Of a stretch of 64,000 bases of DNA, positions 7,044-57,506 are shown piece after piece. Every line of letters starts with the position of its first letter. The first letter of the stretch is position 1. The stretch is from positions 1,426,001-1,490,000 of the forward strand of contig NW_025765403.1 in NCBI RefSeq assembly GCF_003918875.1, given 5' to 3'. The DNA is from Haliotis rubra (lineage: Eukaryota). A program made the position numbers and the translations under genes. A model generated the notes under the pieces. The model made no database searches. It saw only the letters and a program-made list of their open reading frames with translations, and was not told where the DNA came from.

Positions 7044-7203
7044 NNNNNNNNNNNNNNNNNNNNNNNNNNNNNNNNNNNNNNNNNNNNNNNNNNNNNNNNN
7101 NNNNNNNNNNNNNNNNNNNNNNNNNNNNNNNNNNNNNNNNNNNNNNNNNNNNNNNNNNNNNNNNNNNNNNNNNNNNNNNNNNNNNNNNNNNNNNNNNNNN
7201 NNN
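7044..7203. other. Assembly gap (N run)
   Basis: 160 N. Confidence 1.
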
Positions 7204-7915: not shown

Positions 7916-10900
7916 ATGGACAACGATGATGACCACGTCCATAGGTGGGATGTTATTTCAAGTTTATCTTGATTAAGATGATCTTCTCAAATATTATTCG
8001 AAGTATTCATGTTGTCAAATGAATTCATTTGATATATTTTCTGTTGGTTTTAAGGTACCTTAACATTCTAAACTATAGACATTTTCTTGTAAGCAACATG
8101 ATCTTGATGTAGAAGTAATGCAAAGTATAAATGAATTATCGCGTCACTGGATTTATTAATCCAGATGCTGTCAGTGGATTGTATAGTAGGTCCCCCAAGT
8201 GTTGACGCTACCTCCATATGGTGCTGGTATTCAACAGTTCGGGTTGGGGCAACAAAAATTACTTGAATTATTATGCAGATTTTGTAAGGGCCTGGTATCT
8301 CCCATATGTCATTTCTTTTCGATGATAACGAAGACACACTTTTCTTAGACGTCACTTTAAATAACGCCGTTTGATCCATATTCTCAGTGGTTGTGTCATG
8401 TTGAGTCATCTCTGCCATTACAGACCTGATTACGGACAAGATCAAGGTGATGGGAGAGGACGAGGTCGAATGAGAGGTCGAGGTCGATGGGGTCACGGAC
8501 GAGGCTTTAGAGGTGCCGGAGGATGGGGAAGAGGTGGTGGACGAAACGAAGACGAACACAATTTGGATCATGGAAGGTTTGGAGGGAGAGGGCGAGGAGA
8601 ACACAGAGGTAGGGGCGAAGGACACTGGGGAAGAGGTGCTGATCGCGCAGAGGAAGAAGGAAGAGGTCACAATGACGGTGATGGTGCCAGAGGAGGCCGA
8701 GGACAAGGGTTCCGAGGAAGAGGTGGAAGAGGGGGAGGTCATTACCTTGATTACAGGCAATTGCAAGAACTGCGGTCAAAGGATCCATCTACAATTGTTA
8801 TGACACTTGGCCAGGAATCAGGTCTCGGCTCACTCCTCAAACGACACAATCTTTCATCTCATATGATGTATGCGATTGTAGGTGCCCTTGCACAGGCATG
8901 TTTATGTAAATCTGCTCAGACTAACCTTATTGAACTCTTGCTCACTGTTCAGCGGTCAAAATTTTACGACCATGTCCCTGATGTTTTGAACGACATCAGA
9001 AACAGACCAAATGAAAATCCCAGAGAAAAGAGGCAGTTCATCAAAGACTTGATATCAGTTATGAAGGAACTGGCTACCAGACTGCCACATTCATACATTC
9101 ATGTTCTTGGAGTGAAGAGCTTCCTGGAAATGATCCTGCCTGAACTTGAACTAAAGTCTGATATCGTAGATGAAGAGATGCTTCAACACCTGAAGCAGCT
9201 GCAGGATATGCAAACGCCAACTGTTGACAGGACGACAAAAGAAGAAGGTGGGGATGAGAAAAAGGAGTATACTGATGGGACACCACCTAGTGATTTCAGA
9301 GATATGTCCATATTTCCAAATGTCGAGGACATTCACCCTGAGGAGAAACCTTTTCTTCGCAAGAACATAGATGTTGGTAGATACAATGACCTTCATCATT
9401 ACTTGGACGTCCAGTTCCGTTTGTTGAGGGAAGATTTTGTCTACCCTTTGAGGAACGGCATTGCAGAGTATCAAGCTGCCAATGTTCCAGGAGAGAAAGG
9501 TCAGAGACTGAAAGACATACGGGTCTATCATGATGTCCAGATCGTGCGGACAGTGTGCTCAGATGGTGGACTTCTCCACAGAATCATGTTTGACATGAGC
9601 AAGCTTCGCAAAATCAGATGGGAAAATTCTAAGCGACTGATATATGGATCGTTGGTCTGCTTGTCACATGACAATTTTGAAACCCTTCTCTTTGCTACTG
9701 TTTCTGATAGAGATCCAAAGAAACTTCAGGATGGTATACTTGATGTATTACTTGAAAATGATGAAGATCTTGATGACATCCTTTCCCTGGATACCCGTTT
9801 TGTAATGGTAGAGACATCAGCTTACTTTGAGGCCTACAGACATGTCTTGAGAGGTCTGCAGATGCTCCGTGATGGTGATCTTCCATTTGAAGAGTACATT
9901 GTCGAATGTGAGAGTGAGGTGAAGTCACCTCAATACCTCCGGGGTTTAAGGACTGTCAAATATGACCTGCGCCCACTTGTGGATGAAAAAACTGTTCTAA
10001 GGGAAGACACTGCTTTGAGACTGCAGAAAAGGGAGGTGAGCTACGACTTTAGTCGCGAATCACAGATTGCCAACAACATTGAAATACTGAATCATTTGGA
10101 TTGGCCGTCTGCCATCCAACTGCATCTTGATCCGTCACAGTACAAAGCCTTAAAAACAGCCCTCACCAAAGAGTTCGTCATTATGCAAGGACCACCTGGT
10201 ACAGGGAAAACGTATGTTGGTTTAAAGATTGTGAAGGCCCTGTTACACAACACAAAGACCTGGAATGCAAACAACAGATCACCAATGCTCATCGTTTGCT
10301 ACACAAACCATGCACTAGACCAGTTTCTTGAAGGAATAATATCCTTCTACAGAGGAAGTATCATCAGAGTAGGAGGAAGGATCAAAAGTGAGCAACTGGA
10401 GGATTACTCACTCAAAGCACAGAGACAAAGGGCACGAAAATTGCACGGTTCCAGAGATATGAGAAATACTGGACGGATGAGATGGGAAATTCGTAACAGT
10501 ATGATGACCCTGAAGCTTGAGATTGAAAAGATTGGTCAGCAAATAGAAGCAGCCGAGAGGGAGATATTACATGAAGATGTGTTGCGACCATTCATGGGTG
10601 AAAGCTATGATGATATGGTGATGGCGATGAATATGATGCTAATGCAGATGCAGGAAGCAAATGGCCATGTGCCACCACCAACCCCTGTCATGGTAGAGTG
10701 GTTGGGCATTGGTGCGTTTGGCGAAATGGTGAACCCAGCTGAGCAACCGCAACCAGGGGAAGACATTGAAAATGAGGACGAGGATGGTGGACTGATAGAT
10801 GTTCAGGAAGAAGCAGATCTCTTGCAAGAGCAGAGACAGATGCATGACATGGACGATGGTGACATGGAGGAAAGTGAACTTGACAAGCTTCAGAGAATGA

Positions 10901-13900
10901 TTGAGCATCTTCAGTATGAACGAGGTGGATATGTTGCCTTTGATGTGACAAATTTGGACAGGAACCCGAAGGAACAAGAAGATGCAATGCAGTTCCAGTT
11001 ACAGCCTGAAGCCCGAAGACGTCTTAAAAGACGTATTTTGAAAAGATTGAGATCCACACAAAGGATGACATCAGCAGAGGCTAATCGTGTCCGGGATCCT
11101 TGGGCACTCCAAATGAATGATAGATGGAAATTGTACAGATTCTGGGTACACTGTCTCTGTGAAAGACTGCAACGTGACATATCAACAAAGGAGGCTAGAT
11201 ACAAAGCAGTGGTAACTCAGTACAAAGAGTCACAGATGATTGAAGACAAACAGATCATGGAGACTGCAACAGTGATAGGGATGACAACAACAGGGGCAGC
11301 CCGCTATCAACAGGTGCTGTCGGAGATTGGCCCCAAAGTCATAGTTGTTGAAGAAGCTGCAGAAGTTCTTGAGGGACACATCATCACAACTCTGAGCAAG
11401 AAATGTGAACATCTGATACTTATCGGAGATCATAAGCAGCTGAAGCCAAACCCTACTGTATACAAACTTGCAAAGCAATTCAAGTTAGATCTGTCTTTAT
11501 TTGAGAGAATGATCAACAATGGCATGCACTGTGACACGCTGGCTCTTCAGCATAGAATGCGCCCTGAAATTGCCAGGTTAATGAAGCCAATCTACCCCAA
11601 GCTTGAAAATCATTCCTCTGTCCTCAATTATGAGAAGATCAAGGGGATATCTGACAACATGTTCTTCATCAACCATGGATATCAAGAAGAACATGACATT
11701 GAACGTGTCAGTCACGCCAATGAGTTTGAAGCTAGATATGTCGTAGCACTGTGTGAATATCTGATGAAACAGGGATATGAAAGATCACAAATCACAATTC
11801 TCACAACCTACTCAGGACAGCTACTGAAACTGAAGAAGATGATGCCAAAGCAGATTTTCCAGGGAGTCAGATTGACAGTGGTGGACAACTACCAAGGAGA
11901 GGAGAATGACATAATCCTTCTGTCACTCGTGCGAAGCAATGCTGAAGGAAGCGTTGGATTCCTGAAAATTGAAAACCGTGTCTGTGTGGCACTTTCACGG
12001 GCTAAGAAAGGATTATATGTCATCGGGAACTTTGATCTCCTTGCCCAAGAAAGTCAGCTGTGGAGGGAAATAAAGAAAGATTTGCAGATTAACAACCAGA
12101 TAGGAACAACCTTGAACCTATATTGTCAGAATCACCCGCGGGACACGGGCATTGCTGCAAAGAAACCGGAAGACTTCGGGAAAGCTCCTGAAGGTGGTTG
12201 CATGAAGCAGTGCACCTTCAGACTGGAATGTGGACATGTCTGTTCTCGACTTTGCCATCCTTATGACCCCAACCACGAAGAATACAAATGCAATAAACCC
12301 TGTCCAAAATCTATATGCCAGAACAATCACCCATGTCCACGATTGTGCTATCAGCAGTGTGAGAAATGCGAAGTGCCAGTCGAAAAGGTGATACCTCGTT
12401 GTGGACACAAACAGCTTGTCCCCTGTTGCATGAATCCCAGGAAATACGAATGTCAAGCTAAATGTGATAAGGTCTTGAAGTGTGGACACCCATGTGGAAA
12501 CCCATGTGGAATTGAGCATCAGTGCAAACAGATGGTGAAGAAGACGTGGAGATGTGGACACACAAGTGATGTTGAATGCATGAGGAAAGACTCGGCTGTC
12601 TGCAAGGCAAAATGTTCAACAATGCTGGAATGTGGACATACGTGTGCTGGCAACTGTCACGACTGTCATGAAGGAAGGCTGCACGTATCATGCCGTAAGA
12701 ACTGCAAGAGGATCCTTGTCTGTGGACACGAATGTAAGGACATGTGCAGCAACTGTCCCCCATGCAGAAATGTTTGTGAGAACCGATGTCCGCACAGCAA
12801 ATGTTACAAAATATGCGGCGAGATTTGTGTACCATGTAATGAGCCCTGTGAGTGGAAATGTCTGCACCATGCATGCACCAAGAAATGCAGAGAGCCATGT
12901 AATAGACCTCCGTGTGACGAACCCTGCCTGAACGTCCTTCGCTGTGGTCACCAATGCATCGGACTATGTGGTGAGCCTTGTCCACGTCTGTGCAGAGTGT
13001 GCAATCACGATGAAGTCACATCAATCTTGTTTGGCACAGAGGATGAGCCAGATGCAAGATTTGTTGAGCTTGAGGACTGTGGTCATATTGTGGAAGTATC
13101 TGCCATGGACAGGCTCATGCAAATGGATCCTGAAAATGATGCTATTCAGTTGAAAACATGCCCTCACTGCAAGACGCAGATTCGACGGAACACCAGATAT
13201 GGATCTCTGATCAAGAAAATGCTGAAGGATATAGACACAGTGAAAAAACGTTATATTGGAAAGATGACAGAATACGTGTTCTGAAAGCTAAACTTGAAGC
13301 TGAAGCCAACAGGGAAGTTGACCCACAAGAACGGAATGAAAAACTGGATATGCTGAAAAAGGGTTATGTCAACACTGAAGTTGGTCTTAATGCTATTGAG
13401 AATCAATTTCGTTTCTTGAAACGTGCGTCCAAATTATTTGATTCCTATGAAAAGCTTGCAGAGGACTGCAAAGAAGCCGTTCTACGTCCCGTTCTCAGGG
13501 ATGCCATTTCCAGCATGAAGGAGCTGGAGCAATTCCGAAAATGGCTCATGGGGACACGATCATCCCTCAGTGATCAGGATGTCTCAGATGCCCAGGATGA
13601 AGTTGACAGGAATAAGGCTATCATCAGGCTCTTAAAGGTAGAGAGAATTATAGCCATCAGAAACCCTGAAATGCCAGAGGCTTTGAAAAAGAACTCCAAG
13701 CTCTACAGGGGACTTTGAAATATGGCAAAAGGTTTACCAAACAACGGCAAGAAAGAGTGAAGAATATCTTCGAAATTCTAAAGAAGCATGTTCCAGAATC
13801 TGGTCTTGGTATATCTGAAGAAGAAAGGGTGGAAATAGTGAAAGCAATGGCACTCACAAAGGGACATTGGTTTAAATGTCCTAATGGTAATATATTTTTC

Positions 13901-14544
13901 GTAATGTTCTCATTTACCCATCTTTAAATGCACTTTTAGACTTTAGTTAAATTCCTTATGTTTCGATGCTAAATTTACATACGATCGTCCTGGTTCGGCC
14001 TTCACTGTCTTAGTTAATAATTTCTATAAATCACTGTTATTTGTTCAAAACCTGAAGTTATCATTTGAAAACAACCATTTCAAGAAAATAATTGTTGTTG
14101 ACAGACAGTTACTTCATATACTTTTGACAATTTTATTCACCTAAAAATGGGATATTTTAGATGAATCTCTAGTCTTGAAGTAAAGCATTTGGATGTAGGA
14201 TATTGTGTTTGGGGTCCAGCCACATCATGGCACAGGACAACAGATCTGGGTTCCAGAAATTGCCATTGAACTCGAGAATTGACAAGCGAACACTCCAAGT
14301 TCTATTCCACAATCTGATTCCTTAAGTAACTTAGTTACTTTCGATTTCAGGGCATGTCTATGCAATCGGAGAATGTGGTGGAGCAACCATGGTGTCGAAG
14401 TGTCCAGAATGTAACGCTACAATCGGTGGTACCGGGCACAGACTGAGAGGCGACAACGCCCTTGCACCAGAGATGGACGGAGCTGCGTTTGCAGCATGGT
14501 CAGAGCAGGCCAATCTTGGGAACTATAACCTGGATATGCTGTGA
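7916..14544 (+). CDS. ZNFX1: ZNFX1 paralog 1, NFX1-type zinc finger RNA helicase / RZ E3 ligase with N-terminal RGG tract, ~1895 aa after indel correction
   Basis: Exons 7916-7944 (MDNDDDHVH, phase 2), 8424-13886 (phase 1), 14351-14544. Motifs QGPPGTGKT, CYTNHALDQF, VEEAAE, IGDHKQL, SLFER, QHRMRP, VDNYQGEE, RVCVALSRAK; CGH-x-C NF-X1 repeats; ELEDCGH...CPHC RING-like finger; HWFKCPNG|HVYAIGECGG...CPEC...IGGTGH RZ finger. Two 1-nt deletions in A-runs (~13260, ~13686) join ORFs 8371, 13158 and 13715. Confidence 0.93.
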
Positions 14545-19628: not shown

Positions 19629-20079
19629 ATGAAACTGATTCGGGTAGTCAAGTATTCCGAGCGTTACAGTATACACACTGATATACTGGACGTTTGGAAA
19701 ATCAGTTGAGTGACATGCAGTAGCACCTTGTATCGTTCAAAGATATTTCACGCATCAAACCCACACGTATGACCTGCTGAACAGAGTGGAACTCGGGTAT
19801 TCAGGTGTTTACATTACAGCTGTGGGATCATGTGACCTCTTTACATAACACCATTCGTCAAGGGTGTGTTCATAAACATAAGCGATACGTATGAAGTAGA
19901 CAATGAACGAGAAGGCAAAACGACCTGCTCTCGTATAACCACTGAACTATGTGACGATATATTATACTCACAGTGCCCTCTGGTTCAAATAATGCGTTGA
20001 TATCTTTCAGGTTATTGAGCGTCATGGCGGTGCTGCTGGGCTACTAGTGTTAGGCATTAGACTTCACAAAACGGTCAAA

Positions 20080-23000
20080 ATGGAGGAGTTCCCACCACTG
20101 ATGCCTGAAGCCAGGGCTGGAAAGAAGACCAGAGGTAAAGAGGAAAAGATGAAAGAACAGCCTACACCTGCACTTGGTAAACCTTGTTTGAAAGATCTGG
20201 CAAGCTTTCTGGAACAGAGGGAAACAACCGGCAGAGATGAACAGCTTTCAGATGACGAATGTGACAGCACAAGAACACAGAGCCCCATTTCTATCAGTTT
20301 ACCACCCTTATCAACAGTTCAACAGGATATGCATGGAACTGGAACGAAGGCTACAACGTCAAAACCATTGATAAAAGGAAAACAGAAAAAGAGAAAGTTT
20401 GTTTCTTTAGACTTTAACCTTCCATCAGCTAATTCAGAAACTCATCATGGAATGTATGGGAGCAATCTTCATGGAGCCCAGGGGCGTGAAACAGCCATCA
20501 GAGATTCCTTGAGGTCTCCCGCAAATGTGAAGCCAGATTATGAGATTGAAGATGACGCTGCAACACCCAAATTAGAATACCTTGATGACTCCAACACGGT
20601 GGCGAAAAGTGTGATGCAGAAATTGGAAAAGCAAAATCAGAGTTCAAATCTGTGCTATAATCATACCAGCACAATCCACATGATCGAAAACCCCTCCATG
20701 AGTGACCAAGGCGATGTGGGGAGAAGTCTGGCATATAACCCAGGCCTTCAACAAGGAGGACCATGTGCAGGCAAAAGGTATGACTGTAATACCAACACAA
20801 TCTCAACTGTCGAGGCAACACGTGTCTCTGAAACACACGTCCTTGTGGATAAACTGACAGAAGACAAAAAAAGCAACAAACCTTCAAAGAAGGGGAAGAA
20901 GCACAAGACACACATGGTGCCTGCTCCTGTTGAGATACTGGGATTTAAAACAAAGAATCCCAGTCGGAACACAAAAAGCGACAAAGGGAGTACAATTTCC
21001 AAAGCTTTAGACATTAAGATCTCAACGCCTAAACGTCCAGCACAACGAAAGACTCAAAGGCGAGTCATTCCCACTATCCAGCCTGATGACACGGACAGTT
21101 CAGATGAACCGGTGGAGCGAGACTATAAATGGATTCATAAAAAACTCACCGATAGAACGATTTCTTTGTCCCTCTTGATGTCTTTACAAAGTCAGCCATC
21201 CCCTTTAATAGCACTGACTCTTGCCAGGAATGTTGATCTGGATGATCTGTTGAATGATGAAGCATCTGACATAGAAGACTGTCTTCTACTTTTGTCTCTG
21301 ATTTCCAGAGGATGTGAGTGTCAAGTTGTGCCAAAGACTGGATTGCAAATCCTTACAAAGATGACAGTGTTTGTCTCAAAACATTTACGCTCCCTAACTA
21401 CACGACTCGCAGAAAGAGTGCAAACAATTGAGTCATTGACAATTCAAAACTTTTTCAGAGATATGGTGACAATATTGAAAGAGATGGTACACAGAGTGAA
21501 GGACACTGGTACTGATCCAACAGCAATACCCACTCTAATTCTTATTGCTGCAGCTAAACAGTTGACAATTCCTGAAGAGTCACTACAGGCGATCCTCCTT
21601 GATCTGAGGTCATTGAGAGACGCGAGATTCAAAGTATGTGAAGATACTTTCTTGCATAAGGATGACAATTTCCGTCAAATAAAGCTCATGCCCACAAATG
21701 ATGACATAAATCCCGCCATGAAACCACTCCTGAAGAAAAACAAGGTAGTCGGCAAATACACAGACGTTGATGAATATTTAGATGTTCAGTACAGGCTACT
21801 CAGGGAAGACTTCATTCAGCCTTTACGAGAAGGGGTTTCAGAGTATCAAGACCTATTGGCCATGAAGGACAGAAGAGCAACACGTCTGTATCAGAATGTA
21901 CTAGTCAGGCGCTTCTTCTGCTCAGAAGATGGAATCGTATACCGATTACAATTTGATGTAAGCAAACTTTCACATGTTGACTGGGGTAATACAAAGAGAC
22001 TCATGTATGGATCAATGGTATGCATCTCATCTGACAACTTCCAGACAGTACGGTTTGCAATAATTAGTGATAGAAAGCCTGAGAAACTTCAACAAGGGAG
22101 AATTGATATCAAGTTTGATAATAAAGTCAAACTTGATCCAGGAACGAAGTTTACAATGGTGGAAACGCCAGCTCTGTTTGTTGCATATCGACATGTGCTG
22201 ATCGGAATTCAGCAGATAGAGAGTAACAAACTTCCAATGTCTGAATACTTTGTGGAATGTCGTGCAACACTGGCACCTCCAGAGTATTTGACCAAAGATG
22301 ACGCCATCAGCTATGATATGAGTGGTCTTGCAAAGACGTCAGAAGACGTCAGCAGAGCTTCATTCAAGTCTGTATGTGTACACCAGGAAGTGGAATGGCC
22401 TATTGCTAGCGATCTTGAAATGGACGAATCCCAGTTCAATGCGTTCCATACAGCTCTTACTAAGGAACTTGCCATCATTCAAGGGCCTCCTGGAACCGGC
22501 AAGACCTATGTTGGTCTGAAGATTGTGAAAGCCTTGATGCAAAACAGACATGCATGGAACCCTGATAACTCGAGACCATTACTGGTTGTTTGCTACACCA
22601 ATCATGCACTCGATCAGTTCTTGGAAGGAATTTTGACATTTTTCAAAGCGAAGGTTCTCAGAGTGGGTGGGCGATCAAAAAGTGAAATACTGGTTAACCA
22701 TAACCTCAATCGCAAAAGATCTGAGCTGTTCAGGCGTAAAGCCCTCCTAGATGAAGACATCAGTGAAATTCTGGAAATCCGACATGAATTGAAGGACGAC
22801 TTCCTTGTGTGCCAAAGGGAGATAGAGGAGTATGGACAACAAGTTGATGCAACAACAGAAGGAGTCCTTCATGAAGACTATTTAAGGCCCTTTATGAAGC
22901 AGCATTTTAGGAAGATTACCAAAACATTCGGTAAGAAGGACCGTTTTTCTGCCCTCCTGGAATGGCTGGATATTAAAGGAATAGGCAAAGAGGTCTCAAC

Positions 23001-26000
23001 GCGCCCCACTCATACAGCAGCAGCCAAGGCAAGCGTAGAGAAGGATGACGTTGGGCAGGTTGATGAACACGAAGAAGAGGATGAGACAGAAAAGGAAAGG
23101 AAGCTTGATGACATTGATGAATACCTGCAATTACAAACAAGAAATTTATCCATGTATAGGAATCAGTGTCTAGCTGTTAGTCTTCATGACTGTGATTTGA
23201 CAGATGACAAGTGGAAAACTAAACACAAAACGGCTATGAAAAGGGATAGCAGACAAACACTGAAAACACGTTTGAGAAAGGAACTTTTGTCCCACGCAAA
23301 AATGGAAACGCATGAAGCATCCAGCGTGGATGATGCAAGTGCTCTGACAATAGCTGACCGATGGCGATTGTATAGGTACTGGGTTGACCAGTTTTGCCAA
23401 AAGATGCACCACCTGATGGGACCTCTGAAGACAGTATGTCAGAATGCTGCTGATAGGTACAAAGAAGCAAATGCTTTGGTCGACAAATACGTCTTTGAAC
23501 ATTCCTCGGTGATTGGCTTAACTACAACGGGGGCAGCGAGGTATCAGAACCTGCTTACAGATATACAGCCACCGGTTGTAATTGTGGAAGAAGCTGCTGA
23601 AGTATTGGAAGGACATATCATTACATCCCTTAGTCCAGGGTGCCAGCACCTCATCCTGATCGGTGACCACAAACAACTTAGGCCAAATCCAAACGTGTAT
23701 GCACTAGCCAGGAGATATAACTTAGATCTGTCTCTATTTGAACGGATGATCAACAATGGTTTACATTGTGATTGTCTGGAACTGCAGCACAGAATGAGAC
23801 CCTCCATCTCCAAGGTATTAAGGCACATCTATGACAAGTTGAAGGATCATGAATCTGTGTTTGGATATGAGGATGTCCTTGGAGTTTCAGAGAACATTTA
23901 CTTCATTAATCACTCTGTTCAGGAATCAGAAAACAAGGAACTCATGAGTCATCTGAATGACTTTGAAGCACAGTACATCTCGAAACTGTGCCAGTATTTA
24001 CTGAAACAGGGTTACAGTCACAGACAAATTACAGTCCTGTCAACATATTCTGCTCAGGTATCACACTTGAGGTCAATGATGAAAGAAGAGAGACAAGAAG
24101 GTCTACTGATAACAGCTGTTGACAATTACCAGGGAGAAGAAAATGATATCATTCTTCTGTCCTTAGTACGCAGCAACCAAGAAGAAAAGATTGGGTTTTT
24201 GAAGACCGACAACAGAATATGTGTCGCCCTATCAAGGGCAAAGATAGGACTATATGTTATTGGGAATTTTGATTTACTATGTCGGCACAGTGAAACTTGG
24301 AAAAATATCACCCAAGACCTTAAAGATTCAAATCAATTTGGACCAGGTTTGAAACTCTACTGCCAGAGCCATCCGAGTGCAGAGGGCATTGTTGTCACTG
24401 ACCCAAAAATGTTTCAATTGGTCCCTGAGGGTGGATGCATGAAGCAGTGCCATTATGTATTGGACTGTGGACATAGCTGTACTCTGAAATGTCATGCATA
24501 TGACCCAAATCATGTGTTGTTTTCCTGCAAGAAACAATGTCAGAAGCAGATTTGCAAACTTGGTCATCCATGCCCAGCTACTTGCTCAGAGGAATGCCCT
24601 CCCTGTGAGTTCCCAGTCGTCAAAACTATTCCTAAATGTCAGCATACACTGGAGATACCATGCAGCGTGGATCCGGAGTTGCACGTTTGTCCCAATGCGT
24701 GTGACAAAATGTTAGAATGTGGCCATAAATGTGGAAATCTGTGTGGGTATGAACACATCTGCTATGAGACTGTTTCCAAAACATGGCCATGTGGTCACAC
24801 AGGAGAGGTACTGTGTACAGAGCAGGATCAGGCGCCTTGTCTTGTGGGATGTAATGCAATACTGCAATGTGGACATTCATGCGAAGCATTATGTTATGAA
24901 TGCAACGAAGGACGGCTTCATATGCCCTGCAAACGGAAGTGTGACAAGATTCTTTTTGCGGCCATGCATGCAGAGCCTCTTGTTCGAAATGTCCCCCCTG
25001 TACATTTGACTGTGAGAAAGCTTGCTCTCATGGAAAATGCCAGGATCCCTGTGGCCAGAAATGTCAGGAATGTGACAAACCATGTAAATGGGCTTGTGCA
25101 CATTTCAAATGCACACAAATGTGTGGAGACATTTGCGATAGAGATCGCTGTGACAAACGTTGTCGGCGAAAGCTCGAATGTAAACACACCTGTATTGGTC
25201 TTTGTGGAGAAACCTGCCCACGCCTCTGTAGAATATGCCACAAAGATGATGTTTCACCCTTTCTTACTGAGTCAGAAGACATTTCAACAGCCAGGTTTAT
25301 TCTCCTTGAAAACTGTGGACACATTGTCGAGGTACATTCTTTGGACAGAATAATGGAGAAATGCAAAGCCAGCAAACAAATACAACTTCCAAGCTGCCCA
25401 TGGTGTAACACTCTTATAAGACGTAATGCCAGGTATGGGGCTCTACTAAATCAGATACACAAACAAATAGAAATAGAAAAGGCTGCCCTGGGTGAGATGA
25501 CAACAGAAAGGCTCACAACCCTAAAGATGGTGTTGCATACTGACATAGATGGTCTTGAATGTCAAGCTGATGTATGTGAACTGATAGCAGGTGCTGGAGA
25601 AGATGAATCTCGCCTGGTGGCAGTTAAAAACCAGAAGACATTTCTCATTGGAATGGAGAACTTGAAGGCACGAATATGTGAACAAGGAGAGGTGGATGAT
25701 CAAGGAGGAATTTGGCAGGAGATCGCGAATTTTGAGCAGTGGCTGAAAATCCAGCGAGATGCCTTTACTGAGCAGGAAATCTCAGACGCTCGGAACGAAT
25801 TCCAAAGGATTACCATTTGTGTGTTTTTACATGACTTGTTATCACACGAAACAAAAGATGGGTTGCTACCCTCGGCCATGGCACTGCTGCAAAAGGTTAG
25901 GGCTGTCATCAAGGCGAAGAAAAAAATTACTGAAGATGAATATCAGCTCGTTACTGAATTGAAGAATGAGGTTTGCAACCTTTTCCCTGATAGTGAGATG

Positions 26001-26874
26001 TTTTATGGAAATGACTCGAAAGGAAAGCTGCCTGTCTGGAGACACCTGAAAGCGGCACTAAGACATTGGTTCAGGTGCCCAGTCTGTGAGTATACGACGG
26101 TTGATAATAATTACTCAAAGTAAGAATGCAAGCATGCATAACCGTTAATTAACTTACGGAACATTTATGCAGGTTTATGCAAGTAGACACACAGTCTAAC
26201 GAATTAATTTATGCTTTATTAGAACACATATCTGGCACTTTTCTTGTTTTTGAGAATACTTTCAAGTGATCGTGTGCTTTGTAAATATCTGGTTATGTTT
26301 CGACTGTATTCCTAACTAACGAGTGTCTTCACTGAGTGGCACTTTAGAAGGTGGGAAGTACAAAAATGAAGTTATCCATAAGTTTGAATAATATGAAGAT
26401 ATAGATTTTGAACTTGAAAGGTAAATGTTGAGGGAACTATCGTGTTGCGGGACTCAGCCATGTACTATTGTGGCGAGAATTCCGAACGCATTTTTACCAT
26501 CCTCCACCCCTCGTATGAAAAGGTTGTATGTAACCTGTTGTAGCCGATGACCACGTCTACTATGCTGAAGACGGCGAGGTGGAAGACGAATGTTATATGT
26601 GCGTTCGGGACAGAGCTTCAATGGAACACAAGACATGTGAAGGTAGATATTCATCTGTGTCTGAGTATTTAAGTTGTATTTTCGCTTTGAAAGCTATGTA
26701 AGATTAATTTTAATTGATTAAGATTAAGAGTGAAGTTAGCCAAATTGGTTGAACTTCCTTTTCTATTCTTATAATTATGTGGTTATCATAGACAGCCTGG
26801 CCTTTACGATAATTAACATCACCGGGTGTTTGATTTTATTTTCAGACTCAAAGGACTCAAGGGTAGATGTCTGA
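20080..26874 (+). CDS. ZNFX1: ZNFX1 paralog 2 with ~350-aa disordered N-terminal arm and degenerate RZ finger, ~2045-2055 aa
   Basis: Acceptor TTTCAG 20010; ATG 20080 (MEEFPPL); large exon to donor T|GTGAGT 26085/26086; all SF1 motifs intact; one 1-nt deletion in T-run 24953-24957 restores ILFCGHAC and joins ORF 25119. Next exon from 26544 (TGTTGTAG|, phase 1) reads SDDHVYYAEDGEVEDECYMCVRDRASMEH, then either TAA at 26699-26701 or a splice 26642>26846 ending DSKDSRVDV* at 26874 (3' end uncertain). Confidence 0.88.
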
Positions 26875-27159: not shown

Positions 27160-27395
27160 ATTGGTTTGGTTGTTGTTTTACGACGCATTTGGCAATGTTC
27201 CAGCTATATGGTGGAGGTCTGTAAATTATCCAGTCTGGACCAGGCAATCCAGTGATCAACAGCATGAACCTCGTTCTACGATACGATGGCATGTGTCAAT
27301 CAAGTCAGCGAGCCTGACCTCCCGATCCGGTTAGTCGCCGCTTACGACAAGCATGGGTTATGAAGACGAATTCTAACCCGGATCATGACGGGTCT
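27160..27395 (-). mobile_element. SINE-like repeat, family B
   Basis: CCAGCTATATGG...GTCTGGACCAG..AATCCAGTGATCAACAGCATG...GTTAGTCGCC..TTACGACAAGCATGGGTTA shared with 32133, 51328, 62930; 3' tail similar to family A. Confidence 0.8.
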
Positions 27396-38600: not shown

Positions 38601-40080
38601 GGCATGCCAAATGCACTTCAACCTGTGGAGACATGTGCAACAAGAAAAAGTGCAATGATATATGTAGGAAGAAACTAAAATGTCGTCACCCTTGCATTGG
38701 ACTTTGCGATGCCCCGTGTCCAAGCGTATGCAAAAATGCAACCCAGAGGAAATACCGAAAGGTCTGGACGTCTTTGGAACTGAAATCTCCGGGAACACCA
38801 GGTTCATTCAACTGGAAGACTGCTCTCACATATTTGACGTGAAAGGCATGGATGAATATATGGAAGGACACTCAGGAGAAGATGAGAAAACAGTTGTCCA
38901 ACTTAAAACATGCCCAAGCTGCCAGACCCCAATTAGACGGAACCAGCGTTATGTGAACATTATAAAAGGGACTCTTTCAGACATTGAAAAGGCCAAACTG
39001 AAAGTCAGTCGAAATGGACGAAGAGTGAAGGAGTTGGAACAATTAATTTTTTCGATGCAAAGCAGATTTCAAGGCTCAGACAGGGGGGTCGTAAAACGAC
39101 TGACAACAGGCAGCCTTGTTCCGTCGGAGGGTCGCTTGTCGGCACAGGTCAATCAGTTGCGAATCATGGAGAGAGTAGTTCGCCTTGAGAAACTTGTAAG
39201 ATCAGATGCCGCCAAGTACAGCCCTGATCTGTATGACCAAGTTCTAAGAGCCATACATACCTTCAAGGAATGGCTTGTAATTCCGAGGTCTTGTTTTGGG
39301 CAGCAGGAGAGGCAGGATAGTGATGACGAGATGAAACGCCTATCTATGAGCCGTTTTCTCATTACCGCATCCCAGTTGGTTGACTCAGCAGGGAAGGGAA
39401 CTAGTGCTGACATGAATATGCGGCTTCAAGATATCATTCGACGCCTAGCGTCGTCAGAGAAGCACGAATCAGTTCTGCCTGACGCCAAACTATTGGTGGA
39501 AGAAGTCAAGGGTCATGTATCAGAATCCAAGACTGGAGCATGTGATGAAGAGAGGGTCGTGTTTCTAGAAGCGACTGGTCTGAAGCAGGGCCACTGGTAC
39601 AAGTGCAAAGAAGGTAGGTATATTGTATGTTTTGTATGTTTGTATTATGTGTAATAATAAGCCACATGTGCTTACTTTTCTTGCTTGTATTGGAGTATGT
39701 CTAATGGTAATACTTATACATCGTCTGACCAGTGCTATCAGAGTCTTTAGTGGACTGTAGATTGTAATTGCACAATGATAAATCTAAGCAAGTTTTAAAC
39801 TATCGGACAAGAGTGGAAATTGGTTGCATTATCCATTGTATAGACATTAAGTACTGTGTGTTACGTTTCCTCAGGTCATGTCTATGCTATCGGTGAATGT
39901 GTCAGACCTTACGAGGAGGTCACGTGTCCCGAGTGTGGAGGATCTATAGGAGAGGCTGCCCAAAGTCTGACAGAGGACAATGCCTTCGCTCCCGAGATGT
40001 ACGATGATGAGGACCTGCCGTGGTCTGAGGAGAGTGACCATGAGCTTGCACTAAAGCTAGACAAGGAACTTAATGGATAA
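32684..40080 (+). CDS. ZNFX1: ZNFX1 paralog 3 with two N-terminal RHIM-like motifs and a TRADD-N-like domain, ~2150 aa after indel correction
   Basis: Phase-consistent exons 32684-33200 (ph1), 33487-34134 (ph1), 40-nt micro-exon 34307-34346 (ph2), 34571-39613 (ph1), 39875-40080, all GT-AG. Helicase motifs intact. Frameshifts at ~35840-35875 (+1), A-run 36285-36290 (+1) and A-run 38732-38736 (-1) join ORFs 34458, 35812, 36278 and 38680. Confidence 0.87.
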
Positions 40081-40135: not shown

Positions 40136-42465
40136 ACCTATACACTCACTAACAAACCATGTCACCTATACACTCACTAACAACATTATCACCTATACAC
40201 TCACTAACAAACCATATCACCAATACAATCACTAACAAACCACATCTTCAACAGACTCACTAACAAACCATATCACCAATAGGGGTGTCGCGATACGCGA
40301 ATGTATCGATGCATCGATACTTTTTTACTGACGATACGATACGCGATACATGCTTCCGTGTATCGATTCCTATTTTAAAACTTTATCGATTAAAATTTGT
40401 ATGCTATATCCATCTCTTTCGAAGTCTTGATAGTAAAATTATACGAGATCGCTCCGATAAATAGATGTAGCTAGCTGTACTTAAAAAATAGGTTGGAAAC
40501 TAACAGCTTTTGTGATTGGCTAGACTATTTTGATGGACCAATCAGCGAGCGCGTACATTGCCTGTAAGGTAATGCTATGAAAAGGCGCGAAAATTATGTA
40601 TCGCGATACGTATCGTATCGTGACCTTAAAATCGTGATACGTATCGTATCGTGAGATTGGTGTATCGTGACACCCCTGATCACCAATACACTCACTAACA
40701 AACCATATCACCTATACACTCACTAACAAACCATGTCACCTTTACTCACTAACAAACCATATCACTAATATGCTCACGAACAACATTATCACCTATACAC
40801 TCACCAACAAACTATATCACCTATACCCACTAACAAACCATATCACCAATACACTCACTAACAAACCATATCACCAGTACACTCACTAACAAACCATATC
40901 ACCCATACACTCACTAACAAACCATGTCACCTTTACTCACTAACAAACAATATCACTAATATGCTCACGAACAACATTATCACCTATACACTCACCAACA
41001 AACTATATCACCTATACCCACTAACAAACCATATCACCAATACACTCACTAACAAATCATATCACCAGTACACTCACTAACAAACCATATCACCAGTACA
41101 CTCACTAACACACCATGTCATCTGTACACTCACTAACAAACCATATCACCAATAGACTCACTAACAAACCATGTCACCTATGCACTCACTAACAAACCAT
41201 ATCACTAATAGACTCACTAACAAATCATATCACCTGTGCACTCACTAACAAACCATGTTACCTATACTCGCTAGCAAACCATATCACCAATACACTCACT
41301 AACAAATCATATCACCCATACACTCACTAACAAACCATATCACCAATAAACTCACTAACAAACCATATCACCTATACATTCACTAACAACATTATCACCA
41401 ATACACTCACTAACAAACTATATCACCTATACACTCACTAACAGCATTATCATCTATACACTCACTAACAAACCATATCACCAATACACTCACTAACAAA
41501 CCCTATCACCACCCGCTATATCACCAATACACTCACTAACAAACCATATCACCAATACACTCACTAACAAACCATATCACCAATATCAAACGATATCACC
41601 ATACACTCACTAACAAACCATATATCACTAACAATACACTCACTAACAAACGATATCACCAATACACTCACTAACAGCATAACAAACCATGTCACCTACT
41701 ACACCCATATCATATACAACTAACCAAACCATATCACCAATACACTCACTAACAAACCATATCACCAATACACTCACTAACAAACGATATCACCAATACA
41801 CTCACTAACAAACCATATCACCAATACACTCACTAACAAACCCAATACGCTCACTAACAAACGATATCACCAATACACTCACTAACAAACGATATCACCA
41901 ATACCTCATAACAAACCATACCATCACTAACAAACGATATCACCAATACATTATCACCTATACGCTCACTAACAAACGATATCACCAATACACTCACTAA
42001 CAAACGATATCACCAATACACTCACTAACAAACCATATCACCAATATCACCAATCACTAACAAACACCAATATCCAACATATCACCAATACACTCACTAA
42101 CAAACCGATATCACCAATACACTCACTAACAAACCATATCACCAATACACTCACTAACAAACCATATCACCAATACACTCACTAACAAACCATATCACCA
42201 ATACACTCACTAACAAACCATATCACCAATACACTCACTAACAAACGATATCACCAATACACTCACTAACAAACCATATCACCAATACACTCACTAACAA
42301 ACCATATCACCAATACACTCACTAACAAACCCTATCACCAATACACTCACTAACAAACGATATCACCAATACACTCACTAACAAACCATATCACCAATAC
42401 ACTCACTAACAAACCATATCACCAATAGACTCACTAACAAACCATATCACCTATACACTCACAAA
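40136..42465. repeat. 28-bp tandem satellite starting ~55 nt after the ZNFX1-3 stop
   Basis: Unit CCAATACACTCACTAACAAACCATATCA. Confidence 0.95.
40280..40678. mobile_element. hAT-type MITE inserted in the satellite
   Basis: TIRs TAGGGGTGTCGCGATAC / GTATCGTGACACCCCTG; 8-bp TSD ATCACCAA at 40272-40279 and 40679-40686; subterminal CGATAC repeats. Confidence 0.88.
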
Positions 42466-42679
42466 CTTTACCACATACGCTCATTCAAAGACACAATCAT
42501 CAATACACTCATTCACCTATCAATCCCCAATGCGTTTGACACAAGCCCACACTCACATTACCTTTTAAACACCAATGCATTCTGTCACAATTTTCTCTCT
42601 TCTACCAGCACTCCTACACACACGAGCGCGCACACACACAAGCACAGACACACGCAGATGCACTTATATGCATTAATTG

Positions 42680-43205
42680 TGTCACAAGCCCCACCAGCCA
42701 CTCACATATACTATGAAGCACCAAATGCATTACGTCACTAGCCCCACCACTCATTCACATATCCCATCAAGCACCAGTGCATTGTGTCACAAGCCCCATC
42801 ACTCTAAGATGCTAATAAACACCAATGCATTGTGTCACAAGCCCCACCACTCTCTCACAGATACCATTAAGCACCAATGCACTGTGTCACAAGCCACACC
42901 ATTGATACCATTAAGCACAAACCATTGTGTCACAAGCCACACCATTCATCTAAAGATACCATTAAGCACCAATGCATTGTGTCACAAGCCACACTATTCA
43001 CACAAAGATACCATTAAGCACCAATGCATTGTGTCACAAGCCACACTATTCACACAAAGATACCATTAAGCACCAATGCATTGTGTCACAAGCCACACTA
43101 TTCACACAAAGATACCATTAAGCACAAACCATTGTGTCACAAGCCACACCATTCACACAAAGATACCATTAAGCACCAATGCATTGTGTCACAAGCCCCA
43201 CCACT
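42680..43205. repeat. ~52-bp tandem repeat
   Basis: GCACCAATGCATTGTGTCACAAGCCACACTATTCACACAAAGATACCATTAA units. Confidence 0.9.
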
Positions 43206-43497
43206 CACTCCCTCGCGCAAGCATCAACCTATCAACGTTAAACACTAACAATAATTCACGTTCATGTAATCCACCTTCAAAAACACTGCGTGTATTCCGT
43301 TCACAGTCGCCATTGATGCTTTAATTATTAAACAGCATTTTCATTTGCATAACATTTTAATTTCTCATTGCAGCCCTTGTTCAGGATCACATTCATGAAA
43401 ACAGAATCCCCCAATGATCATGCCAGCAGCACAGTTACGCCCGACCCCGCTGCTGAGTGCATGTTTGTTATGGACAGAGAGTCTATATTCCTGAGGG

Positions 43498-43858
43498 AAA
43501 ACATGTGTCTCTCAAATCCTTCAACACGTGATGTTATGAAGGCAACGCGAAGGTTCCAGATGCCTTCTTACGTGCTAACCTTGACCGTCTAACATGTCAG
43601 ATGTTGGACTAACGCTTAAAACAGGTGTCTCTCAAATCCTTCAACACGTGATGTTATCAAGGCAACGCGAAGGTTCCAGTTGCCTTCTTACGTGCTAACC
43701 TTGACCGTCTAACATGTCACATGTTGGACTAACGCTTAAAACAGGTGTCTCTCAAATCCTTCAACACGTGATGTTATCAAGGCAACGCGAAGGTTCCAGT
43801 TGCCTTCTTACGTGCTAACCTTGACCGTCTAACATGTCAGATGTTGGACTAACGCTTA
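43498..43858. repeat. Three near-identical 120-bp tandem copies
   Basis: Sequence at 43501, 43621 and 43741 aligns with only a few substitutions. Confidence 0.95.
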
Positions 43859-46555: not shown

Positions 46556-46994
46556 NNNNNNNNNNNNNNNNNNNNNNNNNNNNNNNNNNNNNNNNNNNNN
46601 NNNNNNNNNNNNNNNNNNNNNNNNNNNNNNNNNNNNNNNNNNNNNNNNNNNNNNNNNNNNNNNNNNNNNNNNNNNNNNNNNNNNNNNNNNNNNNNNNNNN
46701 NNNNNNNNNNNNNNCATTTAAAGTAACCTGATCTGCATCTCAAAATCTGGAATGAGAGTTTGTGCAGCGTTCATAATACCATCAGATCTTAGGATAAGAT
46801 AATTCAAGATTCAAGAAAAATACAACTTTGCAAACATCTTGCACAATCCAAATAACTGATTCCTTTCTATAACATCAGATAAAAACTTGGTATTTCTTTT
46901 GGGACATGATTGCCTACTGACACATCGATCTCATCACGTCCGTCGAGGCTGGAAAGAGTGCATCAATCTTACATTGTAGCTCTCACAAGTTTCC

Positions 46995-57000: not shown

Positions 57001-57506
57001 AATATATCTTAAGTTTTCACCAGCTAGTGTGACACTATATTAAGATTTGCAGACTGGTGTTATAAATCACATTTGAATCTTAACTAAGATAAATATTCGT
57101 CGAGACACCTGCCTGCAGCTTTGAGCCCTTTAGCTGCAATGGGGGGCAGTGTTTATGATTCGAATCCCATATGCGCCGAACTTAGAATAATTATTTTGTC
57201 CATTGTTATAACAAGTGTTCATGCATTTCATCGTGATTGTAATGGATAATTAACTTGACTGTATTGCTGACATATTTAATAGTTGTTTTATGTTTTTACC
57301 CAGGTCATGTCTATGCTATCGGTGAATGTGGAAGAGCATACGAGGAGGCCACGTGTCCCGAGTGTGGAGGATCTATAGGAGGGGCTGCTCATAGACTAAC
57401 AGAGGACAATGCCTGGGCTCCTGAGATGGACGATGCAGAGGACCCGCCGTGGTCTGAGGAGAGAGACTATATGCTTGCTCTGCAGCTTCAGTTTGGTGGC
57501 CGCTGA
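51071..57506 (+). CDS. ZNFX1: ZNFX1 paralog 4, uninterrupted, 1811 aa, intact RZ finger and MIU-like tail
   Basis: Exons 51071-51114 (MDEESADEQALPRR, ph2), 51762-56950 (ph1), 57304-57506, total 5436 nt in frame. All SF1 motifs, NF-X1 repeats, ELEDCKH...CPRC, QWYKCKRG|HVYAIGECG...CPEC...IGGAAH. Confidence 0.95.
51328..51532 (-). mobile_element. SINE-like repeat, family B (intronic)
   Basis: Homologous to other family B copies. Confidence 0.8.

What the first reader, a model, noticed from the sequence alone, without database searches (positions are those of the whole stretch)
26060..26701. Hidden terminal exon of ZNFX1-2 encodes an RZ finger lacking the catalytic cysteine
Seen: absent from the ORF track, a phase-1 exon from 26544 gives HWFRCPV-S-DDHVYYAEDGEVEDECYMCVRDRASMEH. 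The zinc ligands (C, H, CxxC) and the His nine residues after CxxC are kept, but the IGECG loop is replaced by YAEDG. Known: in RNF213/ZNFX1 RZ fingers the Cys of GECG is the transthiolation nucleophile and the downstream His is the catalytic base. Inference: a folded but catalytically dead pseudo-RZ.
Basis: partly seen in the sequence, partly recalled or inferred. Interest (0 to 1): 0.7.

Follow-up and report, generated by a model that had tools for sequence, protein, structure and literature searches.

The report
Abalone ZNFX1 paralog with cysteine-less RZ finger
One of four tandem ZNFX1 antiviral-helicase genes in this abalone window ends in a small spliced exon that is a diverged remnant of the RZ ubiquitin-ligase finger: it keeps the zinc-binding residues but has lost the catalytic cysteine, a variant kept across abalone species and probably ordinary paralog specialisation.

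Summary
The window is Haliotis (most likely H. rubra) and carries four tandem ZNFX1-like genes. All four have a phase-1 intron three codons after the first RZ cysteine. In gene 2, splicing 26085/26544 gives ...HWFRCPV-S-DDHVYYAEDGEVEDECYMC.... A second junction, 26642/26846, adds nine codons, so the exon is penultimate, not terminal. RefSeq models of the syntenic orthologs in H. rufescens, H. cracherodii and H. asinina use the same first junction. No GECG exon exists downstream.

The tail fails Pfam ZnF_RZ-type. It is still RZ-derived: hhalign gives 97% probability and a custom HMM gives 17.6 bits. Alignment shows two extra residues before the zinc His and deletion of the nucleophile 'CGG'. 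The four zinc ligands are invariant in six tails from four species. The 'retained' base His is specific to H. rubra.

Helicase, zinc-finger stalk and Miz-like RING are strongly conserved (dN/dS 0.12-0.25). The RZ keeps only 9 of 31 family-invariant positions. The best reading is a functional helicase that cannot do RZ transthiolation.

Caveats: the assembly has a 1-nt frameshift at 24955, probably a homopolymer error, and folding and zinc binding are unproven. Cysteine-less RZ tails recur in other invertebrate paralogs.

The parts
20080..26085 (+). Large coding exon of ZNFX1-like gene 2. It holds the N-terminal region, the ZNFX1 domain, the SF1 helicase, the NFX1-type zinc-finger stalk, the Miz-like RING, a helical linker and the first half of the RZ-like domain.
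   Evidence: ORFs 20047-25353 and 25119-26123. Pfam hits: ZNFX1 PF25396 (7.6e-31), AAA_11, AAA_12. It is 90% identical to the H. asinina ortholog and 85% to the H. rufescens ortholog. The start MEEFPPL matches the orthologs.
24953..24957 (+). T5 run where the reading frame shifts by one base (frame 1 to frame 0).
   Evidence: The orthologs read CTTATTTGC and the window reads CTTTTTGC. This is the only indel against H. asinina that is not a multiple of three. Similar 1-nt losses in A-runs break g1 (about 13240) and g3 (about 38735), so it is probably an assembly error.
25947..26085 (+). First half of the RZ-like domain: a helix corresponding to the ubiquitin-binding helix, then HWFRCPV with the first zinc-ligand Cys at 26076-26078.
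   Evidence: W and C are invariant across 51 aligned tails.
26086..26543 (+). Intron 1, phase 1, GTGAGT...TTGTAG.
   Evidence: It sits at the same codon and phase as in g1, g3 and g4. The splice sites are conserved in L001 and L002, while the intron body is 57-74% identical with many indels.
26544..26642 (+). The hidden exon: (S)DDHVYYAEDGEVEDECYMCVRDRASMEHKTCE. Putative zinc ligands are His 26552-26554, Cys 26591-26593 and Cys 26600-26602. There is no Cys in the loop between them. The non-conserved His is at 26627-26629.
26643..26845 (+). Intron 2, phase 1, GTAGAT...TTTCAG. If it is retained, the ORF runs on to the TAA at 26699-26701.
   Evidence: The donor is conserved in three species. The read-through part has indels against both orthologs.
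26846..26874 (+). Terminal mini-exon: (D)SKDSRVDV plus a TGA stop at 26872-26874.
   Evidence: It matches the ...DSKDTDKDC end of the H. rufescens and H. cracherodii RefSeq models. The stop is at the aligned position.
14351..14544 (+). Comparator: canonical RZ terminal exon of gene 1 (GHVYAIGECGG...CPEC...IGGTGH).
   Evidence: Pfam PF20173 E 2.1e-15. It equals the C-terminus of the H. rubra RefSeq protein P0004.
39875..40080 (+). Comparator: RZ terminal exon of gene 3. The nucleophile Cys is kept (GECV) but the base His is replaced by Gln (IGEAAQ).
   Evidence: (PF20173 E 1.9e-10).
57304..57506 (+). Comparator: canonical RZ terminal exon of gene 4.
   Evidence: PF20173 E 6.4e-15.

Best explanation
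Gene 2 of a four-gene tandem ZNFX1-like array in Haliotis ends in a three-exon tail: 20080-26085, 26544-26642 and 26846-26874.

Its last roughly 90 residues are a derived RZ finger. The upstream helix, the HWFxC motif and four putative zinc ligands (Cys, His, CxxC) are retained. Two residues have been inserted before the His ligand. The three-residue 'CGG' that carries the transthiolation nucleophile (human ZNFX1 C1860) has been deleted, and the loop has become strongly acidic.

Without that cysteine the domain cannot accept ubiquitin from E2~Ub as a thioester. This step is inferred from the established mechanism. Consistent with lost catalysis, the general-base His is not conserved among orthologs.

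The rest of the protein (SF1 helicase, zinc-finger stalk, Miz-like RING) is under strong purifying selection. The protein is therefore most likely a working RNA helicase that retains at most the one-step, RING-like (Miz/Z-RING) ubiquitin-ligase mode. This resembles human ZNFX1 C1860A/S in vitro, or C. elegans ZNFX-1, which lacks an RZ. This step is also inferred.

The small zinc knuckle is probably kept for a structural or regulatory role.
For: Exon and splice evidence:
- Same intron position and phase in all four paralogs.
- Conserved splice sites, and an exon B without indels against H. rufescens set among indel-rich introns.
- Identical junctions in the RefSeq orthologs P0003, P0122, P0002 and P0121, which are syntenic between a g1-like and a g3/g4-like gene.
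- No other RZ-like exon downstream of gene 2 (tblastn and motif scan).

RZ ancestry:
- hhalign of the variant tails against 46 canonical tails gives probability 97% and E 8.6e-11.
- A custom HMM scores the window's spliced tail at 17.6 bits (E 1.8e-7 at Z=1), against 155, 90 and 120 bits for g1, g3 and g4.
- The alignments place C, H and CxxC on the zinc-ligand columns and a gap on the nucleophile.

Constraint:
- The four ligands are invariant in six tails from four species and two gene lineages.
- dN/dS is 0.12 for the helicase, 0.14 for the zinc fingers, 0.25 for Miz plus linker, and 0.16-0.28 for exon B.
- Family near-invariant positions kept: helicase 219/239, zinc fingers 88/94, Miz-like 17/22, RZ 9/31.
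- The C-terminal module was duplicated onto a g4-like gene in H. rufescens and H. cracherodii and stayed open.

Mechanistic background.
Against: - Pfam ZnF_RZ-type gives no hit for the exon or for whole ortholog tails.
- The AlphaFold2 model is only mid-confidence (mean pLDDT 69, against 83.5 for the canonical g1 tail). It replaces the second hairpin by a helix.
- Foldseek finds nothing significant.
- Ligand spacing is altered, so zinc binding is not assured.
- The main exon has a 1-nt frameshift in this assembly.
- No H. rubra RefSeq protein for this gene surfaced in the search.
- No transcript data could be consulted.
- The near-invariant 'FG' of the Miz-like region, likely at or near the E2-binding F1575, reads 'LT' in this lineage. 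The Miz-only activity is therefore also unproven.
- dN/dS on 26-32 codons has little power.
Confidence: 0.7

Rival explanations
1. In H. rubra the gene is a recently dead pseudogene. The 1-nt deletion at 24955 is real, so the C-terminal 370 residues, including the RZ remnant, are not made in this species.
For: The frameshift is present in the window. The only database protein from this locus is the frame-1 ORF that runs into out-of-frame sequence (P0001). No H. rubra RefSeq protein for it was seen, whereas g1's was (P0004).
Against: It is the only frame-breaking indel in 6 kb against H. asinina. The downstream 1.1 kb stays open with all cysteines in place. Two neighbouring genes show the same kind of single-base loss in homopolymers, and g1 is tagged LOW QUALITY PROTEIN by NCBI. 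Orthologs are intact in three species.
Confidence: 0.15
2. The tail is an RZ relic that no longer folds or binds zinc. It would be an acidic, largely disordered C-terminal extension, and the C/H/CxxC pattern a leftover.
For: No Pfam match. Ligand spacing is changed and only 9 of 31 family-invariant RZ positions are kept. pLDDT is 58-74 across the finger. H. asinina truncates the tail right after CxxC+9.
Against: The four ligands, plus W, Y and the DDH motif, are invariant in six sequences, while about 40% of the other tail positions vary. Exon B has no indel against H. rufescens, and dN/dS is about 0.2. A hairpin across the first two ligands is still predicted.
Confidence: 0.25
3. The active site has moved. 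Another cysteine acts as ubiquitin acceptor, so the domain would still be a transthiolating E3. One candidate is the Cys 12 residues after CxxC (EHKTCE in H. rubra, DIC/NGC in other copies). Another is the extra Cys in H. asinina CQVC or in the HIYCAED of P0065.
For: A Cys at CxxC+12 is present in the H. rubra, H. rufescens and H. cracherodii copies and in the P0065/P0123 lineage. In H. rubra it sits three residues after a His.
Against: H. asinina has a stop before it. The neighbouring His is unique to H. rubra. The alternative cysteines are each lineage-specific. There is no precedent in the RZ literature that was read.
Confidence: 0.05
4. The exon is a chance open frame in an intron, and the protein really ends by read-through at ...CPVCEYTTVDNNYSK* (stop at 26121-26123).
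For: The read-through frame is open for 12 codons and creates a CPVC motif. No transcript data were available.
Against: The conserved GTGAGT donor sits at the family-wide intron position. The exon is conserved in three other species while the introns are not. Gnomon models splice here.
Confidence: 0.02

Closest known systems
RZ domain of human ZNFX1 (zinc ligands C1849/H1853/C1869/C1872, nucleophile C1860, base H1881)
   Same: Same place in the same kind of protein, after the SF1 helicase, NFX1 zinc-finger stalk, Miz-like RING and helical linker. It has the HWFxC motif, the His-x-Tyr motif and the CxxC. The family-wide phase-1 intron is shared. Profile-profile homology is 97% (literature).
   Different: No cysteine at the nucleophile position (the 'CGG' is deleted). 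Two extra residues lie between the first Cys and the His. The IGG..H strand is replaced. The base His is not conserved in orthologs. The tail fails Pfam PF20173.
RZ finger of RNF213 (mouse C4462/H4483, human C4516/H4537)
   Same: A single-zinc C-H-C-C finger with catalytic residues on adjacent loops. It is the founding member of the fold from which this tail derives.
   Different: RNF213 depends wholly on the RZ cysteine and has a dynein-like AAA core and a C-terminal E2-binding domain. The abalone tail lacks the cysteine and sits on a helicase.
C. elegans ZNFX-1 and human ZNFX1 C1860A/S mutants
   Same: These are ZNFX1 proteins without RZ transthiolation that are thought, or shown in vitro, to keep ubiquitin-ligase activity through the Miz/Z-RING domain. 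This is the functional state proposed for gene 2.
   Different: C. elegans has lost the whole RZ, and the human mutants are artificial. Here a zinc-ligand-bearing remnant is conserved within a genus, next to paralogs that have a complete RZ.
Other cysteine-less RZ tails of invertebrate ZNFX1 paralogs
   Same: These tails keep the zinc ligands but lack the nucleophile. They include Haliotis P0006/7/19/42/73/75/99, Gigantopelta P0020/22/104, Asterias P0098/118 and amphioxus P0108/66. Loss of the cysteine is therefore recurrent.
   Different: Most keep the canonical C-x3-H spacing and score 14-90 bits on the custom HMM, or reach sub-threshold Pfam hits. The gene-2 type is among the most diverged, and its module was found only in Haliotis.

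Membership tests
RZ-type zinc finger (Pfam PF20173, RNF213/ZNFX1 finger) | Match to the curated family profile above the gathering score (27 bits) | tested here: not met
   No hit at E up to 1-10 for the exon or for the whole spliced tails of orthologs P0003, P0002, P0065 and P0123. The terminal exons of g1, g3 and g4 score 56.5, 40.6 and 55 bits.
RZ-type zinc finger (Pfam PF20173, RNF213/ZNFX1 finger) | Detectable homology to canonical RZ domains by more sensitive profile methods | tested here: met
   hhalign A2 against A1 gives probability 97% and E 8.6e-11 over 67 columns. A custom HMM of 46 canonical tails scores the window's spliced tail at 17.6 bits, E 1.8e-7 at Z=1.
RZ-type zinc finger (Pfam PF20173, RNF213/ZNFX1 finger) | Four zinc ligands Cys, His, Cys-x2-Cys | tested here: met
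   The ligands are present and invariant in six variant tails, and they align to the ligand columns of 46 canonical tails. Actual zinc binding cannot be tested here.
RZ-type zinc finger (Pfam PF20173, RNF213/ZNFX1 finger) | Canonical ligand spacing C-x3-H-x15-C-x2-C | tested here: not met
   The window has C-x5-H-x12-C-x2-C.
RZ-type zinc finger (Pfam PF20173, RNF213/ZNFX1 finger) | Nucleophile cysteine in the loop between the His ligand and CxxC (ZNFX1 C1860, RNF213 C4516) | tested here: not met
   There is no Cys between His 26552-26554 and Cys 26591-26593. The alignment shows a gap over 'CGG'.
RZ-type zinc finger (Pfam PF20173, RNF213/ZNFX1 finger) | General-base histidine nine residues after CxxC (ZNFX1 H1881) | tested here: inconclusive
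   The His is present in the window (26627-26629). It is Gly in H. rufescens and H. cracherodii. In H. asinina the frame is shifted there (the aligned residue reads Asp, with a stop two codons on). It is absent in P0065/P0123.
RZ-type zinc finger (Pfam PF20173, RNF213/ZNFX1 finger) | E2~Ub transthiolation activity (probe labelling, autoubiquitination) | not testable with these tools
   This needs biochemistry.
ZNFX1 / NFX1-type zinc finger-containing protein 1 (whole gene) | ZNFX1 domain plus SF1 helicase core | tested here: met
   PF25396 at 7.6e-31, AAA_11 at 1.6e-28, AAA_12 at 4e-42. 219 of 239 family near-invariant positions are kept.
ZNFX1 / NFX1-type zinc finger-containing protein 1 (whole gene) | NFX1-type zinc-finger stalk and Miz-like (Z-RING) domain | tested here: met
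   88 of 94 stalk positions and 17 of 22 Miz-like positions are kept, including C.H...CP.C and IRRN.RYG. The 'FG' motif reads 'LT'. Exact mapping of human F1575 was not resolved.
ZNFX1 / NFX1-type zinc finger-containing protein 1 (whole gene) | Uninterrupted reading frame | tested here: inconclusive
   There is one 1-nt frameshift in a T5 run at 24953-24957. Similar homopolymer losses in g1 and g3 point to assembly error.

The most novel reading that the evidence does not exclude
Loss of the RZ nucleophile may not be decay but a recurrent, selected split of labour in expanded invertebrate ZNFX1 families.

Some paralogs, like g1 and g4 here, keep the two-step Miz-to-RZ relay. Others, like g2 and several further Haliotis, Gigantopelta, starfish and amphioxus paralogs, would be natural 'Miz-only' ligases or non-catalytic partners. 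They keep a zinc knuckle for ubiquitin or partner binding, and could co-assemble with the active paralogs.

The tandem array in this window (canonical, Cys-less, His-less, canonical) would then be a natural separation-of-function series for the bifurcated E3 mechanism described for human ZNFX1 in 2025.
Probability: 0.3. Interest if true: 0.55.

Novelty: new variant of a known kind. Interest (0 to 1): 0.35.

Why it matters
ZNFX1 was shown only in 2025 to be a dual-mode E3 ligase, in which the RZ cysteine and the Miz/Z-RING domain each contribute. The ZNFX1 and RNF213 papers read here describe the RZ cysteine as conserved across orthologues and mention only C. elegans as lacking the domain. I found no report of natural cysteine-less RZ variants, though the literature search was limited to these papers and two keyword searches.

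A genus-wide paralog that is under purifying selection and keeps the zinc ligands but deletes the nucleophile sits beside canonical copies. Similar losses occur in other invertebrate expansions. Together these give natural variants for asking what each E3 arm does, and what a non-catalytic RZ knuckle is for.

For annotation, the window shows that RZ exons are routinely missed or read through at a conserved phase-1 intron. It also shows that the H. rubra assembly carries homopolymer frameshifts in these genes. Otherwise this is ordinary divergence of an immune-gene family.

Tried and rejected
- Pfam on the exon alone and on whole ortholog tails gave no RZ hit. It therefore cannot be filed as a PF20173 member.
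- tblastn of the three canonical RZ exons against the window did not find the g2 exon, nor any extra RZ exon. The 'another GECG terminal exon' idea is rejected.
- I searched for short protein fragments carrying the spliced C-terminus, as a stand-in for transcript evidence. None scored at E 1e-10 or better.
- A search with the ortholog's C-terminal module found only Haliotis clusters plus weak canonical vertebrate hits.
- Foldseek of the AlphaFold2 model against the PDB gave nothing at E 0.001 or better.
- Literature searches for abalone or mollusc ZNFX1 found nothing relevant. Four paper calls failed on term length.
- Exact mapping of human F1575 onto the abalone Miz-like region got only to within 2-3 residues, using bird ZNFX1 offsets. 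Q1623 maps to the residue after CP.C.
- A first full-length MAFFT run timed out and was repeated with faster settings.
- The costly search of representative proteins was not used.
- The N runs (7044-7203 and 46556-46714) were left as they are.

Full report
**What is in the window.** The composition and ORF map show four large + strand genes, each with a huge first exon:
- g1: 8371-14544
- g2: 20047-26874
- g3: about 34458-40080
- g4: 51856-57506

A protein search with the g2 main ORF returns NFX1-type zinc finger-containing protein 1-like (ZNFX1) proteins. The window's own ORF and an H. rubra RefSeq protein for g1 (P0004) lie on a contig of the same length, so the window is abalone, most likely Haliotis rubra. 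The g2 main ORF has the ZNFX1 domain and the AAA_11/AAA_12 SF1 helicase.

**Checking the observation.**
- The big exon ends ...HWFRCPV with a T left over, followed by GTGAGT.
- After TTGTAG at 26543, CC completes a Ser codon.
- The frame then gives DDHVYYAEDGEVEDECYMCVRDRASMEHKTCE.

All four genes in the window have an intron at the same place and phase, inside the codon three residues after the first RZ cysteine. Many database gene models of this family stop by reading through exactly there (HWFKCPxG followed by junk). The intron is therefore old and family-wide.

In g1, g3 and g4 the next exon is a canonical RZ second half (GHVYAIGEC...CPEC...IGG..H). It matches Pfam ZnF_RZ-type at 2e-15, 2e-10 and 6e-15. 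The g2 exon gives no Pfam hit.

**Orthologs.** The two closest database proteins are 90% and 85% identical over the core. They are RefSeq models from H. asinina (P0002, 2032 aa) and H. rufescens (P0003, 2038 aa). H. cracherodii (P0122) and a second H. asinina copy (P0121) fall in the same clusters. All end with the same spliced peptide as g2.

Their loci are syntenic. In H. rufescens the gene lies between a g1-like gene and a g3/g4-like gene.

The three-species DNA alignment shows:
- a conserved GTGAGT donor and AG acceptor;
- an exon B with no indel against H. rufescens, 75% and 90% identical, against 57% and 74% in the ungapped part of intron 1, which also has more than 100 gapped positions;
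- a conserved second donor (G|GTAGAT at 26643).

The H. rufescens and H. cracherodii models splice on to a nine-codon mini-exon (...DSKDTDKDC). The window has the counterpart at 26846-26874 (DSKDSRVDV, then a stop at the aligned position). The 'hidden terminal exon' is therefore really the penultimate coding exon. The TAA at 26699-26701 applies only if intron 2 is retained, and that stretch has indels against both orthologs.

H. asinina carries a 5-nt deletion near the end of exon B, and its protein stops at ...RALLEDM.

**Is there another RZ exon?** tblastn with the three canonical exons, plus motif scans of all six frames, find RZ-like sequence only at 14353, 39877 and 57306. Each of these belongs to its own gene. 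Nothing lies between 26.1 and 34 kb.

**Is the tail an RZ finger?**
- By the curated profile it is not. Whole ortholog tails also fail PF20173, while other degenerate Haliotis tails reach 16-26 bits.
- By ancestry it is. A profile of five variant tails aligns to a profile of 46 canonical tails with 97% probability and E 8.6e-11.
- A custom HMM of the canonical tails scores the window's own spliced tail at 17.6 bits (E 1.8e-7 for one sequence). The same HMM gives 155, 90 and 120 bits for g1, g3 and g4.
- MAFFT, hhalign and hmmsearch agree on the anatomy. W, the first Cys, the His, the Tyr and the CxxC fall on the canonical columns. Two residues are inserted between Cys and His. The 'CGG' holding the nucleophile is a gap.

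According to the papers read, human ZNFX1 uses C1849/H1853/C1869/C1872 for zinc, C1860 as the transthiolation nucleophile and H1881 as the general base. The corresponding residues in mouse RNF213 are C4462 and H4483.

In H. rufescens and H. cracherodii it is Gly. In H. asinina the frame is shifted there, so the aligned residue reads Asp, with a stop two codons on. It is absent in a second gene lineage. It is not a conserved feature.

**Constraint.** Pairwise Nei-Gojobori estimates against the two orthologs:

| Region | dN/dS |
|---|---|
| Helicase | 0.12 |
| Zinc-finger stalk | 0.14 |
| Miz-like region plus linker (downstream of the frameshift) | 0.25 |
| Exon B (26-32 codons only) | 0.16-0.28 |

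Positions that are at least 90% conserved in 46 canonical ZNFX1 proteins, and how many the g2 lineage keeps:

| Region | Kept |
|---|---|
| Helicase | 219/239 |
| Zinc-finger stalk | 88/94 |
| Miz-like domain | 17/22 |
| Linker | 5/5 |
| RZ | 9/31 |

The four putative zinc ligands are invariant in six tails. These include P0065 and P0123, an H. rufescens and H. cracherodii paralog. Its first roughly 1700 residues are g4-like (about 80-90% identical to the window's g4). Its last roughly 480 residues are g2-like. That module was therefore duplicated and kept open.

**Structure.** AlphaFold2 on the H. asinina tail, the closest available to the window, used 51 aligned tails. It gives mean pLDDT 69, with a hairpin across the first two ligands followed by a helix starting at CxxC. 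The canonical g1 tail gives pLDDT 83.5 with two hairpins. Foldseek against the PDB finds nothing significant. Folding is plausible but not shown.

**The frameshift.** The g2 main exon changes frame at a T5 run at 24953-24957. The orthologs have one more base there (CTTATTTGC against CTTTTTGC). This is the only non-triplet indel against H. asinina in 6 kb.

g1 (about 13240) and g3 (about 38735) are broken by single-base losses in A runs, and NCBI tags g1 as LOW QUALITY PROTEIN. An assembly error is the likelier cause. A very recent pseudogenisation in H. rubra cannot be excluded.

**Mechanism.** Shown:
- the exon, its splice structure and its RZ ancestry;
- the absence of the nucleophile;
- conservation of the ligands and of the rest of the protein.

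Inferred:
- The domain cannot form the E3~Ub thioester.
- The protein still works as an RNA helicase.
- Any ligase activity would run through the Miz/Z-RING arm. In human ZNFX1 this arm is active in vitro without C1860, and it is presumed to be the only arm in C. elegans ZNFX-1.

The Miz-like region keeps its zinc site and the IRRN.RYG motif. It has 'LT' where the family has a near-invariant 'FG', close to where human F1575 maps. Even that activity therefore needs testing. The variant loop and tail are strongly acidic, as seen directly in the sequence.

**How unusual is it?** Among the tails recovered, 50 have the full C-H-C-C-C-H pattern and 7 vary only at the base. About 20 keep zinc ligands but lack the nucleophile. 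These include three other Haliotis paralog groups, Gigantopelta, Asterias and amphioxus proteins. In this very window g3 keeps the Cys but has Gln for the base His.

The g2-type module itself was found only in Haliotis, within the reach of the word-based search. The papers read call the cysteine conserved across orthologues and mention only C. elegans as lacking an RZ. No paper on abalone ZNFX1 tails was found.

**Verdict.** The tail is a conserved, RZ-derived, cysteine-less remnant, not a Pfam-level RZ member. The 'retained' His is incidental. Folding and loss of activity remain predictions. It is a new variant of a known kind, of moderate interest mainly to people working on ZNFX1 and RNF213 ligase mechanisms and on invertebrate immune-gene expansions.

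The N runs were not filled. No step had to be referred.

Noticed in passing
window 34458-40080 (g3); RZ exon 39875-40080: The third ZNFX1-like gene has several frame breaks. One is a 1-nt loss in an A5 run near 38735. Its RZ exon keeps the nucleophile Cys (GECV) but has Gln in place of the general-base His (IGEAAQ). It still matches PF20173 (E 1.9e-10).
   Followed up: partly
window about 13240 (g1), 24953-24957 (g2), about 38735 (g3): All three frame breaks that were examined are single-base losses inside A or T homopolymers in otherwise conserved coding sequence. This suggests systematic homopolymer compression in this assembly rather than real mutations.
   Followed up: partly
L002 16338-16560 (H. 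asinina, intron before the RZ-like exon): The 44-bp stretch containing the 3' splice acceptor (…GGTTGTATGTACCCTGTTGTAG…) is tandemly repeated about five times in H. asinina. This gives several candidate acceptors. It is single-copy in the window and in H. rufescens.
   Followed up: no
P0065 (H. rufescens) and P0123 (H. cracherodii): These are a mosaic paralog. Residues 1 to about 1700 are about 80-90% identical to the window's g4. The last roughly 480 residues (Miz-like, linker, Cys-less RZ tail) are about 85-90% identical to the g2 ortholog. This looks like recombination within the tandem array. No such gene is in this window.
   Followed up: partly
window 40136-43210 and 43498-43858: There are large minisatellite arrays just downstream of g3: a 28-nt unit in about 65 copies, a 52-nt unit in about 10 copies and a 120-nt unit in 3 copies. 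They have extreme C-over-G skew and account for the GC-skew trough at 40-44 kb.
   Followed up: no
window 30496-30944: A 12-nt (ACATACACGCAG) microsatellite of about 32 copies explains the cluster of overlapping ORFs on both strands at 30.3-31.3 kb.
   Followed up: no
window 27175-27354: A roughly 180-bp segment downstream of g2 matches at least five other places, on both strands, in the H. asinina locus at 75-83% identity. It is a dispersed repeat (SINE- or MITE-like).
   Followed up: no
window 7044-7203 and 46556-46714: Two runs of N (160 and 159 bases).
   Followed up: no
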